Of a DNA stretch of 64,000 bases, positions 2,632-64,000 are shown piece after piece. The stretch covers positions 8,308,001 to 8,372,000 of the forward strand of contig OZ004614.1 of the NCBI GenBank assembly GCA_963924565.1, written 5' to 3'. The DNA comes from Ascidiella aspersa. Its lineage: Eukaryota. The notes under the pieces were generated by a model, which saw nothing but the letters and a program-made list of their open reading frames with translations, ran no database searches and was not told where the DNA came from. Position numbers and translations under genes: made by a program. Position 1 is the first letter of the stretch, and each line of letters opens with the position of its first letter.

Positions 2632-2704
2632 ATGATAAGCCTTGCGATGAATGAAATGATAGCTTGTTTAATATTCCTCGTAGTTTTGTGCTTCGGACAA
2701 ACAG
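2632..2704 (+). CDS. Leader exon of paralogue 1, signal peptide MISLAMNEMIACLIFLVVLCFGQT(G)
   Basis: Hydrophobic core, phase-1 donor ACAG|GTTAGT matching the phase-1 acceptor at 7834; TATA box about 100 nt upstream; homologous exon at 37068-37140. Confidence 0.75.
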
Positions 2705-5700
2705 GTTAGTTTTCTGGTTTTGTTTTTCTCTTAAATACATTTTAACGCTACGACCACCTTCTTAATTTCATCAAGCATTATTTATCATATGTTTGAAAAA
2801 TGTTGTGGTTTGTTTACAATATCTTACAAGGGTCGCAAATATTGGGTTGTCATGTTGACCATACAACCTTATATACTGGCAATGCCCTAAGAGTAATGTT
2901 ACAACAACATTGACATAATCAAATAATCTGTAAGGAAAGTCAAGAAGATATCCTTTCCTATAGTATGTCATGTTTTTCATGTTAGTAAACCCTTTAATTT
3001 TTTACTAATTTTTTATGAATATTTAGAAACAGTTATCTGTGTGTAGTGTACTAGATAACACATGACAATAGGCCGATGACTAGCTATCTCATAGCAGTTG
3101 CGTTACTTTGCCGCCTTGTGAGGTAATATTCCTATAATATTATATTATCGTGCAACCAGTCTGACCTGTAGTAACTTGTTGTTTTGACGTGACTTTGTAG
3201 CTATTCGACATAAACGACGTAAACGATGTTAAAGTGCGCATCAGCAGTTTTTGCTGTACACGTTTATTGGTTTGCCAGCCCAAAATAGCAATGAGGGATA
3301 TCTGAATTAAAAGTTTGTGACACACTAGAGCAGACGTGGGTAACATACGGCCCGCGGGCCGGATTCGCCCGGTCCGCCAAGCAGTTTATTCCAGCCCGCG
3401 GCTTAATTTCCTTAAAATACATAGGCTAAGCCAAAACAAGGGCGAGTTTCTACATGTTTGGTTTATCGTAAACACTCTTTCCAGGGACGCATCTTGTCAC
3501 GAACCCACCAAATTCGATTTTTAGTCTTTTTTAAATACTAAAACTGAAATTGTTTTCGCGCTTCGCGAGAATCTCTTCTGTCTTTCTCGTATATTTTTGG
3601 CAACTTTACAGACAAATAGCGTCCTCTGCACTGTGGCACTCTCTCAATGAAAGTTGAACAAACTTAGCCTAATACTTATATATTTTTAGCGCATCGAAAG
3701 TAATCCGTCTATAAAATATGAGCGAAATACCAAACGTTTTCTAAACGAAAATATTTTTTGTTAACCTAATTTAGTTAATGCGATGTTGTGTGTTTTTCAT
3801 GATTTACATCGTTTTGCAATATGGCCGTTGTACCGCAAGTAACACATCGGTAACTTCAAGCTTTTAAATTTTTTTTGTATGAAATTTTTTCGTATTTGAA
3901 TTTTAACTTTTGGGTCAAAGTGCCCAACAACTTGATAAACGCCAATAAATCAACCAATGTACTATTTTTGTCTGTTTATATTGCTTCACGTTCCCCTCTT
4001 AATCTAAATTAAACTTTGCATTTTAAAACAAATAAGTCGAAATTTTTTCGCGTTTCCACGTCTTGTGGCTTTAAATTGGACTTAAATTGCACATTTTCGC
4101 ATAACTTCAAACGTAATATAACAAATTTGTTAGCCTGCTGACGTCATATTGCGTGCGAAAGAGTTTCTGACGTCATATTGCGTGTATTTCAGATCCATTT
4201 ATGACACGGACCGCCATAACATAAGTTTCTCCTGCGGCCCGCGCCTAAAAATAATTACCCACTCCTGCACTAGAGCAAAATATGGTATGCAACAGTGCCC
4301 TACAGCAATTTCAAAAGCCTGCAACTGAATGTTTTGTGGTGTGGGTCAAAAACCAAAGCACACCGCGGGCCACATATTTTTGTTCCGCGGGCCGCATTTG
4401 GAATAGTAACTTGGGCTACTTAACCAGTGAACTTATTAAACTACGATCATATTTAGTTCAAACGGCAGAGTTTAAACAGTTTAAAAACTATATGGAATTT
4501 AGACCTGATCCGTTAGAAATTAGTGCAGTTCTAAGCAAGAAGGTCTACAACAATTAGGGCATCCAAAAGACAAAAAGTCTGACTTTTAGACTTTGAAGTC
4601 TCAAACGATGTACTAATTTGACTTAACAAATCTGCATAAGAAGATGAAGTTTAATAATACTTGACCTACCATAACCCAAACGATAACCAGCACCCTAACT
4701 CAAATATTGTGCGTTGATTTAAAAATTACAAAAACGCTTTAGGTCCCAATGCATCAATGTGTGACATCTTCTGCCCCCAGAGTTTGAGCTTTTTACCCAG
4801 AGTTCTAATAATTATTAAATGTTTGCGTTTGAGTTCAGATAGGTCGAGTATTATTATTTCTATCTCACATTTTCTTATCTTTTGTGAACACTTTTTAGCG
4901 AATATTGTCAAAATATCTATTCCAGAAGTTTAACTATAGGTCCAATAAGTGCATTGCCACGACCTCAAGGTGTAAAAGTCAGACTTTTCTACCCTTGGAT
5001 GCCCTAGTTGTCGTAGACCTATTTGCTGATCGGGGTGGAATTTTGGGTATCGCTTCTCAACATTTCTAAATACCAAAATCTCAGTGAAAAAGCGATTTCC
5101 ATCCTTGTCGCATGCCAACGTCATACCTTTGCGAGCAAAGATTTCTTGCTCTTGTTGAAATTAAAACCAAAAAAGAGACTTTATCAAGGATGTTTATCCG
5201 CTTATGATAGGAGCACTCGAAAAGTCTACTGCCTCGGTTCGCACATGCTGACTGAAAAATTTCAACATCAGCAACGCTCGCATTAAATGACTGATGAAAT
5301 TTTGTATTTTAATAAAGATATTCTACGGATTCCCTATACTTGCAGCCCTGCGTATCCTTATTCCGATTAGGATTACTACAGATTCGGTGTATTGCGTGGA
5401 CTGGGGTGTATAGGCTTTGAGTAAACGTAAAAAGGGCCTACCATTCCGAAAAAGGTTAAGAAGCACCGCCTCAGACTACGACAAGTAACAGTTAGCCAAA
5501 AGCCGATCTAAACTTAGGTCGGTGTGCAGCAAAGTAGTTTTAGAGTTGCAGCAGTATAGTAAATTAAACATTATTATGTAACAACTGGTTGCCGCCATCG
5601 AAACGTTACAAAAATACATATAGGCTATCCAAATTGATTGCCTTAGTTTTTACAAAAGGGTGACGCGCAGTATTATGCAATTTTATATTTTAACTTCAAC

Positions 5701-63900: not shown

Positions 63901-64000
63901 TTATTGTCGGTAAATTGCATATTCCTTATTTATTTAAGTTGGTCCAACATTCCTCAACGCGCCATCACCTGCTGCAGAGTTCAGCCAATTACAGTCATTG
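37068..64000 (+). CDS. Receptor-type protein tyrosine phosphatase, tandem paralogue 2 (5' part only: SP-CTLD-Ig domains; runs off the window)
   Basis: Exons homologous to paralogue 1, frame-consistent: leader 37068-37140 or 40604-40664, 48514-48717, 48779-48853, 50814-50993, 55637-55912, 56982-57093, 57618-57802, 59378-59495, 61067-61254, 61524-61641, 61701-61894, 63079-63190, 63420-63619, 63939->64000. Most exon lengths equal paralogue 1. Its PTP domains are not in the window, so the phosphatase call is by paralogy. Confidence 0.85.
38563..38918. mobile_element. GGAGTCGG-type hAT MITE
   Basis: TIR CAGGGCTGCGGAGTCGG / CCGACTTTGCAGCCGTG; related fragments near 52150-52357 and 54600-54945. Confidence 0.7.
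40492..40498 (+). promoter_or_regulatory. TATA box of paralogue 2 leader B
   Basis: TATAAAA followed by TCAGTT...GAGTTTAGT as in the other two promoters, 112 nt before the Kozak ATG. Confidence 0.5.
40604..40664 (+). CDS. Second candidate leader exon of paralogue 2, signal peptide MEKPVTCLIIIIAAVCFGKA(G)
   Basis: Perfect Kozak GCCACCATGG, hydrophobic core, CFG-K/Q-x-G ending like the other leaders, phase-1 donor GCAG|GTCAGT, TATAAAA at 40492. Confidence 0.7.
42023..42098 (+). mobile_element. tRNA-derived SINE head or tRNA relic
   Basis: TAGCTTAGTTGT...GGTCGCGGGTTCGAATC; no clean cloverleaf. Confidence 0.55.
42634..43330 (-). mobile_element. L1/Tx1-type LINE 3' fragment (ORF2 zinc-binding region)
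   Basis: CTFCKKATETVYHLFQLC motif in ORF 42617-43069; candidate TSD GAACAAYAATAA; absent from the homologous site near 1000. Confidence 0.78.
49848..50578. mobile_element. hAT MITE
   Basis: Perfect 16-bp TIR CAGGGGTCGGCAACCT; flanks TTCTAAGAA/TTCTAGAA. Confidence 0.88.
51951..51994. repeat. (TA)n microsatellite
   Basis: About 22 TA units. Confidence 0.95.
52003..52910. mobile_element. hAT MITE with a nested fragment
   Basis: TIR CAGGGGTCGGCAAC / GTTGCCGACCCCTG; perfect TSD CTGTATAT. Confidence 0.9.
58331..58384 (+). pseudogene. Relic 3' end of a duplicated Ig half-exon
   Basis: KVAANSAGSQQTKMLTVT|GTAAAGTGTGACAAAACTGGTATT matches 15542-15660, including the downstream intron. Confidence 0.75.
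58653..59236 (+). repeat. Unclassified interspersed repeat ending in 22-bp tandem repeats
   Basis: Reverse complement of 29956-30535; three copies of ATCGTAAAATTGGTCCCCGAAT at 59162-59227. Confidence 0.8.
59837..60390. mobile_element. hAT MITE (same family as 11839-12456), right end partly deleted
   Basis: Starts CAGGGATGTCGAACC; perfect 8-bp TSD TCCTATAT; internal homology to 11839-12456. Confidence 0.85.

What the first reader, a model, noticed from the sequence alone, without database searches (positions are those of the whole stretch)
2632..64000. Tandem, diversifying family of lectin-Ig receptor tyrosine phosphatases (candidate invertebrate recognition or immune receptor array)
Seen: two head-to-tail, frame-intact paralogues 34,436 bp apart, each starting with a CTLD and a stack of Ig domains; the complete one ends in a tandem PTP. 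They differ in lectin loops, Ig number and leader exons. Known: vertebrate RPTPs are mostly dispersed genes, while tandem arrays of CTLD/Ig receptors with variable domain number are typical of immune and allorecognition loci, where inhibitory receptors normally recruit a separate SH2 phosphatase. Inference: sensor and phosphatase are fused here in one rapidly evolving receptor family.
Basis: partly seen in the sequence, partly recalled or inferred. Interest (0 to 1): 0.85.

Follow-up and report, generated by a model that had tools for sequence, protein, structure and literature searches.

The report
Tandem lectin-Ig receptor tyrosine phosphatase genes
The window holds two of eight neighbouring, intact-looking genes for cell-surface receptors that join a lectin-like head and six or seven antibody-like domains to a built-in tyrosine phosphatase; the outer parts diverge fast and are reshuffled between copies, but an immune role is untested.

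Summary
Two head-to-tail genes lie on the + strand, with start codons at 2632 and 37068, exactly 34,436 bp apart.

Copy 1 (2632-34145) can be spliced into 38 in-frame exons:
- signal peptide;
- C-type lectin-like domain (CTLD);
- seven Ig-like domains;
- a compact second CTLD;
- FN3, stalk and transmembrane segment;
- an intact phosphatase domain D1;
- a dead D2.

Copy 2 lacks Ig2 and runs off the window. Its transmembrane, juxtamembrane, D1 and D2 exons lie open within 7 kb downstream.

Both belong to an array of eight such genes (about 260 kb). The genome holds 14 phosphatase-tailed members. It holds at least 40-50 genes with related ectodomains, most of them without a phosphatase.

- Outer exons are 52-86% identical between copies; inner exons are 90-100% identical.
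- Domain-wide dN/dS is below 1 everywhere. Only one lectin loop exceeds 1.
- Segments 97-99.98% identical are shared between non-adjacent copies, so the genes are recombination mosaics.
- The lectin domain lacks the canonical sugar- and calcium-binding residues.

Lectin-bearing receptor phosphatases are predicted but unnamed in Styela, Phallusia and Ciona, the Styela ones with the same Ig-lectin-FN3 layout. I found no paper on them. This scan already reported the same family elsewhere on this chromosome (s1-790840). Immune function and expression are untested.

The parts
2632..34145 (+). Copy 1 (array member g3): complete predicted gene, 38 exons, about 1,850-1,890 codons by summed exon lengths.
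   Evidence: Frame-consistent splice chain. Exon conservation against copy 2 and other array members.
2632..2704 (+). Leader exon of copy 1: start codon plus a hydrophobic signal peptide, phase 1, donor GTTAGT.
   Evidence: The promoter and leader module 2238-2751 is 84-90% conserved in front of other array members.
7834..8750 (+). N-terminal C-type lectin-like domain in three exons: 7834-8028, 8118-8195 (GC donor) and 8571-8750.
   Evidence: PDB profile hits to CTLDs. Pfam Lectin_C on exon c at E 0.041. Alignment of 12 paralogues. GC versus GT donor.
9353..24726 (+). Seven Ig-like domains: Ig1 9353-9628; Ig2 13208-13319 and 14389-14582; Ig3 15063-15174 and 15411-15595; Ig4 15745-15862 and 22423-22610; Ig5 22721-22838 and 22903-23093; Ig6 23713-23824 and 24045-24244; Ig7 24433-24726.
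   Evidence: Phase-1 domain exons split at phase 2. Pfam ig/I-set on half-domain exons. Ig1 model is a seven-strand sandwich matching CD4, LAIR-1 and antibody V domains at TM 0.55-0.68.
24788..25163 (+). Compact second CTLD-like domain in two exons: 24788-24952 (donor AAG|GCAAGT) and 25074-25163. About 85 residues, four Cys, no long loop.
   Evidence: Sequence inspection. 80-86% identical in array member g1. No Pfam hit at exon level, so the assignment is tentative.
25328..26806 (+). FN3 (25328-25548, 25713-25880), Ser/Thr/Pro-rich stalk (26155-26338) and transmembrane exon (26614-26806).
   Evidence: Pfam fn3 at E 3.8e-4. Hydrophobic stretch followed by a basic stop-transfer in the next exon.
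27470..30702 (+). Juxtamembrane exons (27470-27534, 27794-27969, with a YGNV motif) and phosphatase domain D1 in seven exons (28156-30702). The KNRY-type loop, WPD, VHC-S-AGAGRTG and QT..QY motifs are all present.
   Evidence: Pfam Y_phosphatase at 27.8-59.1 bits. PDB hits to RPTP epsilon/alpha, LAR/sigma and CD45. Motifs are identical in all array members held.
31521..34145 (+). Degenerate phosphatase domain D2 in seven exons. It has WSS in place of WPD and no catalytic Cys. The C-terminus carries YANF. Stop codon TGA at 34143-34145.
   Evidence: Weak Pfam hit at E 0.0056. tblastn to amphioxus RPTP D2 at E 2.6e-5. 93-100% conserved between copies, dN/dS 0.13-0.25.
15950..19985 (-). Broken LTR retroelement inside the intron that splits Ig4 of copy 1. 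It is not part of the gene product.
   Evidence: 166-nt direct repeats, 96% identical. RT-RNaseH and integrase Pfam hits on separate short ORFs.
37068..64000 (+). Copy 2 (array member g4), 5' part. Leader 37068-37140; CTLD 48514-48699, 48779-48853 and 50814-50993 (GC donor); Ig1 55637-55912; no Ig2; Ig3 56982-57093 and 57618-57802; Ig4 59378-59495 and 61067-61254; Ig5 61524-61641 and 61701-61894; Ig6 63079-63190 and 63420-63619; Ig7 starts at 63939 and runs off the window.
   Evidence: Homology mapping with conserved splice sites and no stop codons. The next 4.4 kb past the window are 98% identical to the Ig7-to-D1 stretch of g1. Its transmembrane, juxtamembrane, D1 and D2 exons are open at C8:8374037, 8375008, 8376471 and 8378717.
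40604..40664 (+). Second leader-like exon upstream of copy 2's lectin exons, in the same phase as the main leaders. Either an alternative first exon or a relic.
   Evidence: No counterpart in the other units held.

Best explanation
The window covers two members (g3 complete, g4 in part) of an eight-gene head-to-tail array. The genes encode type I receptor protein tyrosine phosphatases. According to earlier scan notes, which I did not verify, the genome is a sea squirt's.

Each protein is predicted to carry, outside the cell:
- a non-canonical C-type lectin-like head;
- six or seven Ig-like domains;
- a compact lectin-like module, an FN3 domain and a glycosylated stalk.

Inside the cell it carries:
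- a juxtamembrane region with a YxN tyrosine motif;
- a catalytically competent D1;
- a conserved but dead D2;
- a C-terminal YANF motif.

Shown here:
- The array grows and is remodelled by duplication and by unequal crossing-over or gene conversion.
- This keeps the phosphatase half nearly uniform under strong purifying selection.
- The outer half differs in sequence and in domain number between copies.

Inferred:
- Binding of a protein or unusual glycan ligand by the variable ectodomain changes where, or how actively, D1 dephosphorylates tyrosine-phosphorylated partners.
- Each copy would therefore couple a different surface cue to the same inhibitory or gating output.
- Relatives with the same kind of ectodomain but other tails would give a different output.
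For: - Gene models and motifs.
- Domain identity.
- Array: eight D1 exons, 88-100% identical, at C8 8.243-8.480 Mb, spaced 24-41 kb apart. Eight juxtamembrane exons, 97-100% identical.
- Family size: 14 juxtamembrane/D1 pairs in the genome, at least 51 lectin exons and 42 Ig7 exons.
- Outer versus inner divergence: 52-86% against 90-100% amino-acid identity. dN is 0.07-0.25 against 0-0.03, and dN/dS is 0.19-0.79 against 0-0.25.
- Mosaic structure. Window 58438-64000 is 99.98% identical to g1. Window 49550-55953 is 97.4% identical to g6. Window 28640-38332 is 97.1% identical to the 3' half of g6. Neighbouring lectin exons are only about 70% identical.
- Ig2 is present in four of the eight array genes.
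- The Ig2b exon of g3 is 92% identical to that of a gene at 24.117 Mb that has no phosphatase exon nearby.
- Styela clava has predicted proteins with the same architecture, with and without phosphatase tails.
Against: - No transcript evidence.
- Three junctions in copy 1 and one in copy 2 use GC donors. One of them (8196) is GT in the paralogues and might be a defect.
- Only alternate 10-kb pieces of the array could be read. The intactness of g0, g1, g2, g5, g6 and g7 is therefore known only in part.
- g0 shows no lectin exon and g7 no Ig7 exon.
- Near-identical segments could in part be assembly duplications.
- No ligand, catalytic activity or cell type is known.
Confidence: 0.75

Rival explanations
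1. Immune or allorecognition reading. The genes are germline-diversified non-self sensors in which the inhibitory phosphatase is built in, so no SH2 phosphatase needs to be recruited through an ITIM. They would work as the inhibitory arm of a paired-receptor system whose other arm is the phosphatase-less relatives.
For: - Clustered multigene organisation, variable domain number and recombination mosaics.
- A hotspot of non-synonymous change at the loop that binds ligand in canonical CTLDs.
- Near-identical ectodomain modules shared with phosphatase-less genes.
- Earlier scan notes report tyrosine-motif tails on relatives (not tested here).
- A colonial sea squirt uses clustered Ig-family receptors with ITIM/hemITAM partners for allorecognition (PMC12582321).
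Against: - No expression, polymorphism or challenge data.
- Domain-wide dN/dS is below 1.
- The lectin framework is 82-85% conserved across clusters, which is far less diverse than known allorecognition genes.
- The Botryllus receptors are a different family (Fester/FcoR).
Confidence: 0.22
2. Adhesion or wiring reading. The genes are cell-cell adhesion or guidance phosphatases, like the LAR or RPTP-mu types. They would have been expanded for developmental, tissue-sorting or gamete-recognition purposes and have nothing to do with immunity.
For: - Ig plus FN3 plus a tandem phosphatase is the layout of adhesion-type RPTPs.
- D1 exons match LAR/sigma and alpha/epsilon best.
- The framework is under purifying selection.
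Against: - Adhesion RPTPs are normally single conserved genes with clear orthologues. Here no protein above about 60% identity in D1 exists among 1.8 billion representatives.
- The ectodomain has no detectable match even in Styela.
- Eight tandem copies with shuffled modules are atypical for wiring receptors.
Confidence: 0.2
3. Artefact or decay reading. Much of the array is recent neutral segmental duplication, pseudogenes, or falsely duplicated haplotypes in the assembly. The real functional repertoire would then be one or a few genes.
For: - Segments 97-99.98% identical between units 60-106 kb apart.
- GC donors at conserved GT sites.
- A retroelement inside copy 1.
- g0 and g7 seem to lack parts of the gene.
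Against: - Every exon examined is open with conserved splice sites.
- dN/dS is well below 1 in all parts.
- The offsets of the similar segments differ (+106, -62, -104, +41 kb), so they are not one duplicated haplotig.
- Adjacent copies differ by 15-48% at the protein level in their ectodomains.
Confidence: 0.07

Closest known systems
Predicted lectin-bearing receptor phosphatases of other ascidians. Styela clava: XP_039259062.1 (LOC120335592), LOC120336013, 'RPTP delta-like' and 'RPTP mu-like'. Phallusia mammillata: CAB3265293.1. Ciona intestinalis: XP_018667200.2.
   Same: - Lectin_C domains fused to a tandem phosphatase, with Ig and FN3 as well in Styela and Ig in Phallusia. Styela models are 1,842-2,184 residues long.
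- Styela also has phosphatase-less relatives of the same ectodomain (P0164-P0166). Only one of these (P0165) is recorded on the same 31.3-Mb contig as phosphatase-tailed members.
   Different: - Only 40-60% identical in D1.
- No detectable ectodomain match to this window.
- Ciona's version has EGF repeats instead of Ig domains.
- All are automatic, unnamed or misnamed predictions. I found no paper that describes them.
Vertebrate adhesion-type RPTPs (LAR/sigma/delta; mu/kappa) and RPTP alpha/epsilon
   Same: - Type I receptors with Ig and FN3 domains and a D1-D2 tandem.
- D1 is active and D2 is regulatory.
- D1 exons score best against epsilon/alpha and LAR/sigma.
- The C-terminal YANF resembles the Grb2-binding tail tyrosine of RPTP alpha (from memory, not tested).
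   Different: - No vertebrate subtype carries a C-type lectin-like domain (established classification, from memory).
- Those genes are dispersed and conserved, not tandem arrays.
- D2 here has lost the catalytic Cys altogether.
Paired immune receptor clusters (KIR, Ly49, LILR) and the Botryllus Fester/FcoR clusters
   Same: - Tandem multigene clusters.
- Lectin-like or Ig ectodomains.
- Related ectodomains on different signalling tails.
- Copy and domain turnover by recombination (PMC12582321).
   Different: - Those receptors signal through ITIM or ITAM motifs and recruit separate phosphatases or kinases. Here the phosphatase is part of the receptor.
- There is no sequence relationship.
- Polymorphism and immune expression are unknown here.
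CD45 (PTPRC)
   Same: - An abundant, glycosylated tandem-domain receptor phosphatase that sets signalling thresholds.
- D1 exons match it at E 4.5e-14 and 2.4e-18.
   Different: - The CD45 ectodomain is mucin plus a Cys-rich region plus FN3, from a single gene whose diversity comes from splicing.
- Here the diversity comes from gene copies.

Membership tests
Classical receptor-type protein tyrosine phosphatase (Pfam PF00102) | PTP domain match above the curated cut-off | tested here: met
   Four D1 exons score 59.1, 27.8, 45.0 and 53.3 bits against a cut-off of 20.9.
Classical receptor-type protein tyrosine phosphatase (Pfam PF00102) | Catalytic motifs in D1: HC(X5)R, the Asp of the WPD loop, the KNRY-type pTyr loop and the Q loop | tested here: met
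   NRYKNIIP, WPDHG, VHC|S|AGAGRTG (the Ser codon is split over a predicted junction) and QT..QY are present. They are identical in g0, g5, g6 and g7. Enzyme activity was not measured.
Classical receptor-type protein tyrosine phosphatase (Pfam PF00102) | Signal peptide and a single transmembrane helix between the ectodomain and the PTP domains | tested here: inconclusive
   A hydrophobic leader and a 23-residue hydrophobic stretch followed by RRKKR are seen by eye. No predictor was run.
Classical receptor-type protein tyrosine phosphatase (Pfam PF00102) | Second (D2) domain catalytically competent | tested here: not met
   WSS/WSN replaces WPD and there is no Cys at the active-site position. 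The domain is still conserved.
Vertebrate RPTP subtypes R1-R8 | Ectodomain composition and D1 orthology to one subtype | tested here: not met
   The CTLD + Ig + CTLD + FN3 layout fits none of them. D1 exons match epsilon/alpha, LAR/sigma, CD45 and gamma/zeta at similar scores. The best protein among 1.8 billion representatives is about 50% identical.
C-type lectin-like domain (Pfam PF00059) | CTLD fold signature: N-terminal helix region, WIGL-like core, C-terminal W.W.D..C....F.CE, conserved Cys | tested here: met
   The exon-a profile hits the PLA2 receptor, FcRY, Endo180, DC-SIGN and CD69 (E 5.6e-9 to 0.3). The exon-c profile hits mosGCTL-1, collectin-11 and MBP-C (E 0.12-2). Pfam on exon c alone gives 15.1 bits, below the 22.6 cut-off. 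The whole domain could not be searched because exons were not joined.
C-type lectin-like domain (Pfam PF00059) | Canonical Ca2+/sugar-binding residues (EPN or QPD, and WND) | tested here: not met
   The positions read GPS/NPS and WGD/WGN/WHD in all 12 paralogues aligned.
Immunoglobulin superfamily | Ig-type beta-sandwich domains with the Cys...Trp...Cys core | tested here: met
   Pfam ig scores 22.4 bits (cut-off 21.8) on 22373-22645, with sub-threshold I-set/Ig_3 hits on other exons. The C...W...YxC pattern is present in Ig2-Ig7. Ig1 has no Cys pair but folds as a seven-strand sandwich (pLDDT 70.6) matching CD4, LAIR-1 and V domains. The Ig7 model was too poor to use.
Paired or diversifying immune receptor cluster (KIR/Ly49-like, Fester/FcoR-like) | Tandem multigene cluster with copy and domain turnover | tested here: met
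Paired or diversifying immune receptor cluster (KIR/Ly49-like, Fester/FcoR-like) | Closely related ectodomains on opposing signalling tails | tested here: inconclusive
   Ig2b is 92% identical to that of a gene with no PTP exon nearby. The juxtamembrane exon occurs only in the 14 PTP genes.
Paired or diversifying immune receptor cluster (KIR/Ly49-like, Fester/FcoR-like) | Positive selection at ligand-contact sites; allelic and copy-number polymorphism; immune-cell expression | not testable with these tools
   The only hint is a dN/dS of 1.2-1.5 in 9-codon windows over one lectin loop. There are no population or RNA data.

The most novel reading that the evidence does not exclude
These genes would be the inhibitory arm of an undescribed chordate recognition system. 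Germline-diversified lectin-Ig sensors would carry their own tyrosine phosphatase, so they need no ITIM and no SHP-type partner. They would be paired with relatives that have near-identical ectodomain modules but tyrosine-motif tails, and they would be reshuffled by recombination within and between clusters. The system would serve allorecognition or microbe sensing in sea squirts.
Probability: 0.2. Interest if true: 0.85.

Novelty: new variant of a known kind. Interest (0 to 1): 0.55.

Why it matters
Receptor tyrosine phosphatases are usually few, dispersed and conserved, and for many of them the ligand is still unknown. Here one invertebrate chordate genome holds 14 that share one nearly invariant phosphatase module but carry different, recombining lectin-Ig ectodomains. 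They sit within a family of 40-50 related receptors that have other tails.

That gives a natural series for two questions. The first is how ectodomain engagement controls a receptor phosphatase. The second is whether a phosphatase fused directly to a sensor can replace the ITIM-plus-SHP arrangement of vertebrate inhibitory receptors.

The result also shows that the 'RPTP epsilon-like' or 'uncharacterized' gene models in Styela, Phallusia and Ciona belong to a wider theme of lectin-bearing receptor phosphatases across ascidians, which I could not find described.

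Tried and rejected
- **Reading the whole array.** The array was read in alternate 10-kb pieces and otherwise only through hit tables.
- **Representative-protein search with a D1 exon.** It found no near-identical protein (best about 50% per stretch), so this species' proteome is not in the library. I could not name the species. 'Sea squirt' rests on earlier scan notes and on ascidian proteins being the only ones with this architecture.
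- **First look at the top hits.** The eight best-scoring hits scanned had FN3, Sushi, fibrinogen or Ig ectodomains and no lectin domain. The lectin-bearing ones turned up only when all 156 hits were screened with my own exon profiles.
- **Styela proteins against the window.** tblastn of the Styela lectin-Ig proteins gave no ectodomain match. Homology of the ectodomains, as opposed to convergence of architecture, is therefore undecided.
- **Pfam on single ectodomain exons.** Most results were sub-threshold.
- **Ig7.** The sequence search against PDB was uninformative, and the Ig7 model was too weak (pLDDT 56) to search with.
- **Literature.** Six searches for lectin-type receptor phosphatases in ascidians, sea urchin or invertebrates found nothing specific. 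Two things I recalled could not be confirmed: a 1991 PCR survey of many PTP domains in Styela plicata, and lectin-type RPTPs in the sea urchin phosphatase survey. One Fugu table lists a PTP among CTLD proteins, without detail.
- **Alternative splice choice rejected.** My scoring first preferred 8211/8542 for lectin exons b and c. I rejected it because conservation in 10 paralogues ends at 8195 and begins again near 8571.
- **Joined model.** All searches were exon by exon, by reference.

Full report
**Scope and limits**

The window is G000:C8:8308001-8372000 (+) of a 308.6-Mb assembly in 75 contigs. It is AT-rich, 33-43% G+C, and has no N runs. Earlier notes of this scan call the genome a sea squirt. 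I could not confirm the species, because no near-identical protein exists in the 1.8-billion-protein library.

Every search was made exon by exon, by reference, and lengths are sums of exon lengths.

**The observation**

Each encodes a hydrophobic signal peptide that ends in phase 1 at a good donor. Downstream, the exons of the two copies align in the same order at 70-85% nucleotide identity, and most ectodomain introns do not align.

**Copy 1 (array member g3)**

A splice chain of 38 exons from 2632 to the TGA at 34143-34145 keeps the frame throughout. Summed exon length is about 1,850-1,890 codons. The order of parts is:

| Part | Coordinates |
|---|---|
| Leader | 2632-2704 |
| C-type lectin-like domain, three exons | 7834-8750 |
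| Ig-like domains Ig1-Ig7 (five split by a phase-2 intron, two on single phase-1 exons) | 9353-24726 |
| Compact, roughly 85-residue lectin-like module | 24788-25163 |
| FN3 | 25328-25880 |
| Ser/Thr/Pro-rich stalk and transmembrane exon | 26155-26806 |
| Two juxtamembrane exons | 27470-27969 |
| Phosphatase domain D1 | 28156-30702 |
| Phosphatase domain D2 | 31521-34142 |

A few acceptor positions are approximate (FN3b, D1a, D1d). Three donors are GC:
- 24953 has the classic AAG|GCAAGT context.
- 8196 is GT in copy 2, the one paralogue whose alignment reaches the donor, so it might be a weak or defective site.
- 33002, in D2 exon d, is the third.

**Domain evidence**

- *D1.* It is a bona fide classical phosphatase domain. 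Four exons score 27.8-59.1 bits on Pfam Y_phosphatase against a cut-off of 20.9. The pTyr-recognition loop, the WPD loop, the VHC-S-AGAGRTG signature and the Q loop are all present.
- *D1 relatives.* D1 exons match tandem-domain receptor phosphatases best: epsilon/alpha, LAR/sigma, then CD45 and gamma/zeta. No single subtype stands out.
- *D2.* It is recognisable only weakly (Pfam E 0.0056; tblastn to an amphioxus RPTP D2 at E 2.6e-5). It has WSS for WPD and no active-site Cys, so it is a pseudophosphatase.
- *C-terminus.* The protein ends in ...SYANFTN.
- *Lectin domain.* Profiles built from the paralogous exons support the assignment. Exon a hits CTLDs of the PLA2 receptor, the IgY receptor, Endo180, DC-SIGN and CD69 (E 5.6e-9 to 0.3). 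Exon c hits the C-terminal W.W.D..C....F.CE end of mosquito and collectin CTLDs (E 0.12-2).
- *Ig domains.* Half-domain exons give ig/I-set hits at or just under threshold. Ig1 lacks the Cys pair but models as a seven-strand sandwich (pLDDT 70.6) that matches CD4, LAIR-1 and antibody V domains at TM 0.55-0.68.

**Copy 2 (array member g4)**

- All its exons inside the window are open, with AG and GT (once GC) at the homologous positions.
- It has no counterpart of either Ig2 exon, so it has six Ig domains.
- The 4.4 kb just beyond the window (C8:8372001-8376449) are 98% identical over their full length to the Ig7-to-D1 stretch of array member g1.
- Its transmembrane, juxtamembrane, D1 and D2 exons are found open at 8374037, 8375008, 8376471 and 8378717.

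**The array and the wider family**

- The D1 WPD exon occurs eight times at 88-100% identity between C8:8.243 and 8.480 Mb, all on the + strand, 24-41 kb apart. The juxtamembrane exon occurs at the same eight places at 97-100% identity.
- Seven of these eight genes show the lectin exon (none for g0). Seven show the Ig7 exon (none for g7).
- Ig2b is present in g2, g3, g6 and g7 only. Ig number therefore varies within the array.
- Genome-wide, the juxtamembrane exon and a D1 exon of at least 74% identity co-occur at 14 genes: eight here, two at 9.92-10.01 Mb and four at 24.20-24.50 Mb.
- The lectin exon has at least 51 copies and the Ig7 exon 42. Almost all are on C8, in clusters at 8.25-8.46, 9.9-10.2, 19.97-20.0, 22.65-22.83, 24.0-24.56 and 25.19-25.37 Mb.
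- Most family members thus have the ectodomain but no phosphatase. This agrees with an earlier follow-up report of this scan on the 22.65-Mb cluster (s1-790840), which says the other tails carry tyrosine motifs. I could not read those tails.
- Ig2b of g3 is 92% identical to the exon of a phosphatase-less gene at 24.117 Mb. That is closer than to its own neighbours, at 91, 84 and 73%.

**Divergence and selection** (Nei-Gojobori estimates, exon by exon, g3 against other members)

| Region | Amino-acid identity | dN | dS | dN/dS |
|---|---|---|---|---|
| Ectodomain | 52-86% | 0.07-0.25 | 0.13-0.69 | 0.19-0.79 |
| Juxtamembrane, D1, D2 | 90-100% | 0-0.03 | 0.03-0.25 | 0-0.25 |

- The outer half accumulates amino-acid changes about ten times faster. 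No domain as a whole shows dN above dS.
- The g3-g4 and g3-g1 values for Ig4-Ig6 are not independent, because g4 and g1 are nearly identical there.
- The lectin framework is 82-85% conserved across 9-12 paralogues from four clusters.
- Variation concentrates in the 4-5 residues after an invariant NGW, at the place of the EPN motif of sugar-binding CTLDs. There, 9-codon windows averaged over all pairs give dN/dS of 1.2-1.5, against 0.05-0.7 elsewhere. This is suggestive and has not been tested statistically.
- The canonical Ca2+/sugar ligands are absent. The positions read GPS or NPS for EPN, and WGD, WGN or WHD for WND. A protein ligand or a non-canonical glycan mode is more likely than classical lectin activity.

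**Mosaic structure**

| Window segment | Part of the window genes | Matches | Identity |
|---|---|---|---|
| 58438-64000 | g4, Ig3b to Ig7 | g1, 106 kb away | 99.98% |
| 49550-55953 | g4, lectin exon c to Ig1 | g6 | 97.4% |
| 28640-38332 | g3, D1 to the next leader, introns included | 3' half of g6 | 97.1% |
| 33239-39352 | g3, D2e to past the next leader | g2 | 95.2% |

By contrast, the lectin and Ig exons of the same gene pairs are only 62-86% identical and their introns mostly do not align. The offsets differ in size and sign, so this is not one duplicated block.

Repeated unequal crossing-over or gene conversion homogenises the phosphatase half and recombines ectodomain modules. Assembly error cannot be excluded for the 99.98% segment without reads.

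**Relatives elsewhere**

- The best-scoring library hits scanned had FN3, Sushi, fibrinogen or Ig ectodomains.
- Screening all 156 hits with my lectin-exon profiles, followed by Pfam and name look-ups, found lectin-bearing tandem phosphatases only in ascidians:
  - Styela clava XP_039259062.1 (Ig + two Lectin_C + fn3 + two PTP domains; 1,842 residues) and XP_039258521.1;
  - Phallusia mammillata CAB3265293.1 (Ig + Lectin_C + PTP);
  - Ciona intestinalis XP_018667200.2 (Lectin_C + EGF + PTP).
- Styela has further members, named 'delta-like', 'mu-like' or uncharacterized, and phosphatase-less relatives of the same ectodomain. Some members of each kind are recorded on the same 31.3-Mb contig.
- These proteins are 40-60% identical to the window's D1. 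Their ectodomains give no match to it.
- The architecture is therefore shared among ascidians, while the ectodomains are beyond exon-level recognition. That could mean fast evolution or independent assembly.
- I found no publication on such proteins. The nearest published parallel is the Fester/FcoR receptor clusters of Botryllus (PMC12582321), which are a different family.

**How it most likely works**

Shown:
- The genes encode type I receptors with a competent D1, a conserved dead D2 and a variable ectodomain.
- The array keeps the signalling half constant and varies the sensing half.

Inferred:
- Ligand engagement alters the access or activity of D1 towards phosphotyrosine substrates, as proposed for other receptor phosphatases.
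- D2 and the YGNV and YANF tyrosine motifs serve docking or regulation.
- Phosphatase-less relatives with similar modules give a contrasting signal.

The process these genes serve is open. Immunity, allorecognition, adhesion and gamete recognition all remain possible.

**Verdict**

This is a new variant of known kinds (a receptor phosphatase, and a clustered recognition-receptor family). It has already been met by this scan on other DNA of the same chromosome.

Noticed in passing
window 15950-19985 (- strand): Remnant of an LTR retroelement. It has 166-nt direct repeats (96% identical) at both ends, and RT-RNaseH and integrase domains on separate short ORFs. It sits in the 6.5-kb intron that splits Ig4 of copy 1, 88 bp after exon Ig4a. 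It is broken into many reading frames and I only described it.
   Followed up: partly
window 40604-40664: A second leader-like exon lies 3.5 kb after copy 2's leader. It has a start codon, a hydrophobic stretch ending CFGKA, and the same phase-1 donor. None of the other array pieces I hold has a counterpart. It could be an alternative first exon or the relic of a lost gene.
   Followed up: partly
L015:8215-8413 (= C8:8268215-8268413); copies also at C8:8374661-8374825 and on all large contigs: A dispersed repeat of about 200 nt that matches on both strands (MITE-like) lies in the intron between the transmembrane and juxtamembrane exons. There are dozens of copies genome-wide.
   Followed up: no
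window 1-2076 and 5716-7787 versus 41684-45340: Repeat blocks, 68-86% identical, are shared by the upstream region and first intron of copy 1 and by the first intron of copy 2. A zf-RVT trace lies on the - strand at 42617-43069. This is probably retroelement debris.
   Followed up: no
G000:C6 28.0-32.6 Mb (also 5.0 and 7.2-7.3 Mb): More than 50 further phosphatase WPD-loop exons, 45-55% identical to the query, lie in dense arrays, many with stop codons inside the match. This is a second and larger receptor-phosphatase expansion. The genome has at least 89 such exons in all.
   Followed up: no
window 8196, 24953, 33002 and 50994: GC instead of GT splice donors in the predicted models. 24953 has the textbook GC-donor context. 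8196 is GT in copy 2, the one paralogue whose alignment reaches the donor, and may weaken splicing of copy 1's lectin domain.
   Followed up: partly
C8:24117272-24117463 (-): The Ig2b exon of a gene in the 24-Mb cluster with no phosphatase exon nearby is 92% identical to that of copy 1. This is closer than any neighbour in copy 1's own array, and it hints at exchange between clusters or at paired ectodomains.
   Followed up: partly
C8:8220001-8238400 (L013 covers 8220001-8230000): The first array member (g0) has Ig7, transmembrane, D1 and D2 exons but no detectable lectin exon, and nothing related in the 10 kb I hold upstream. It may be truncated at the edge of the array.
   Followed up: no
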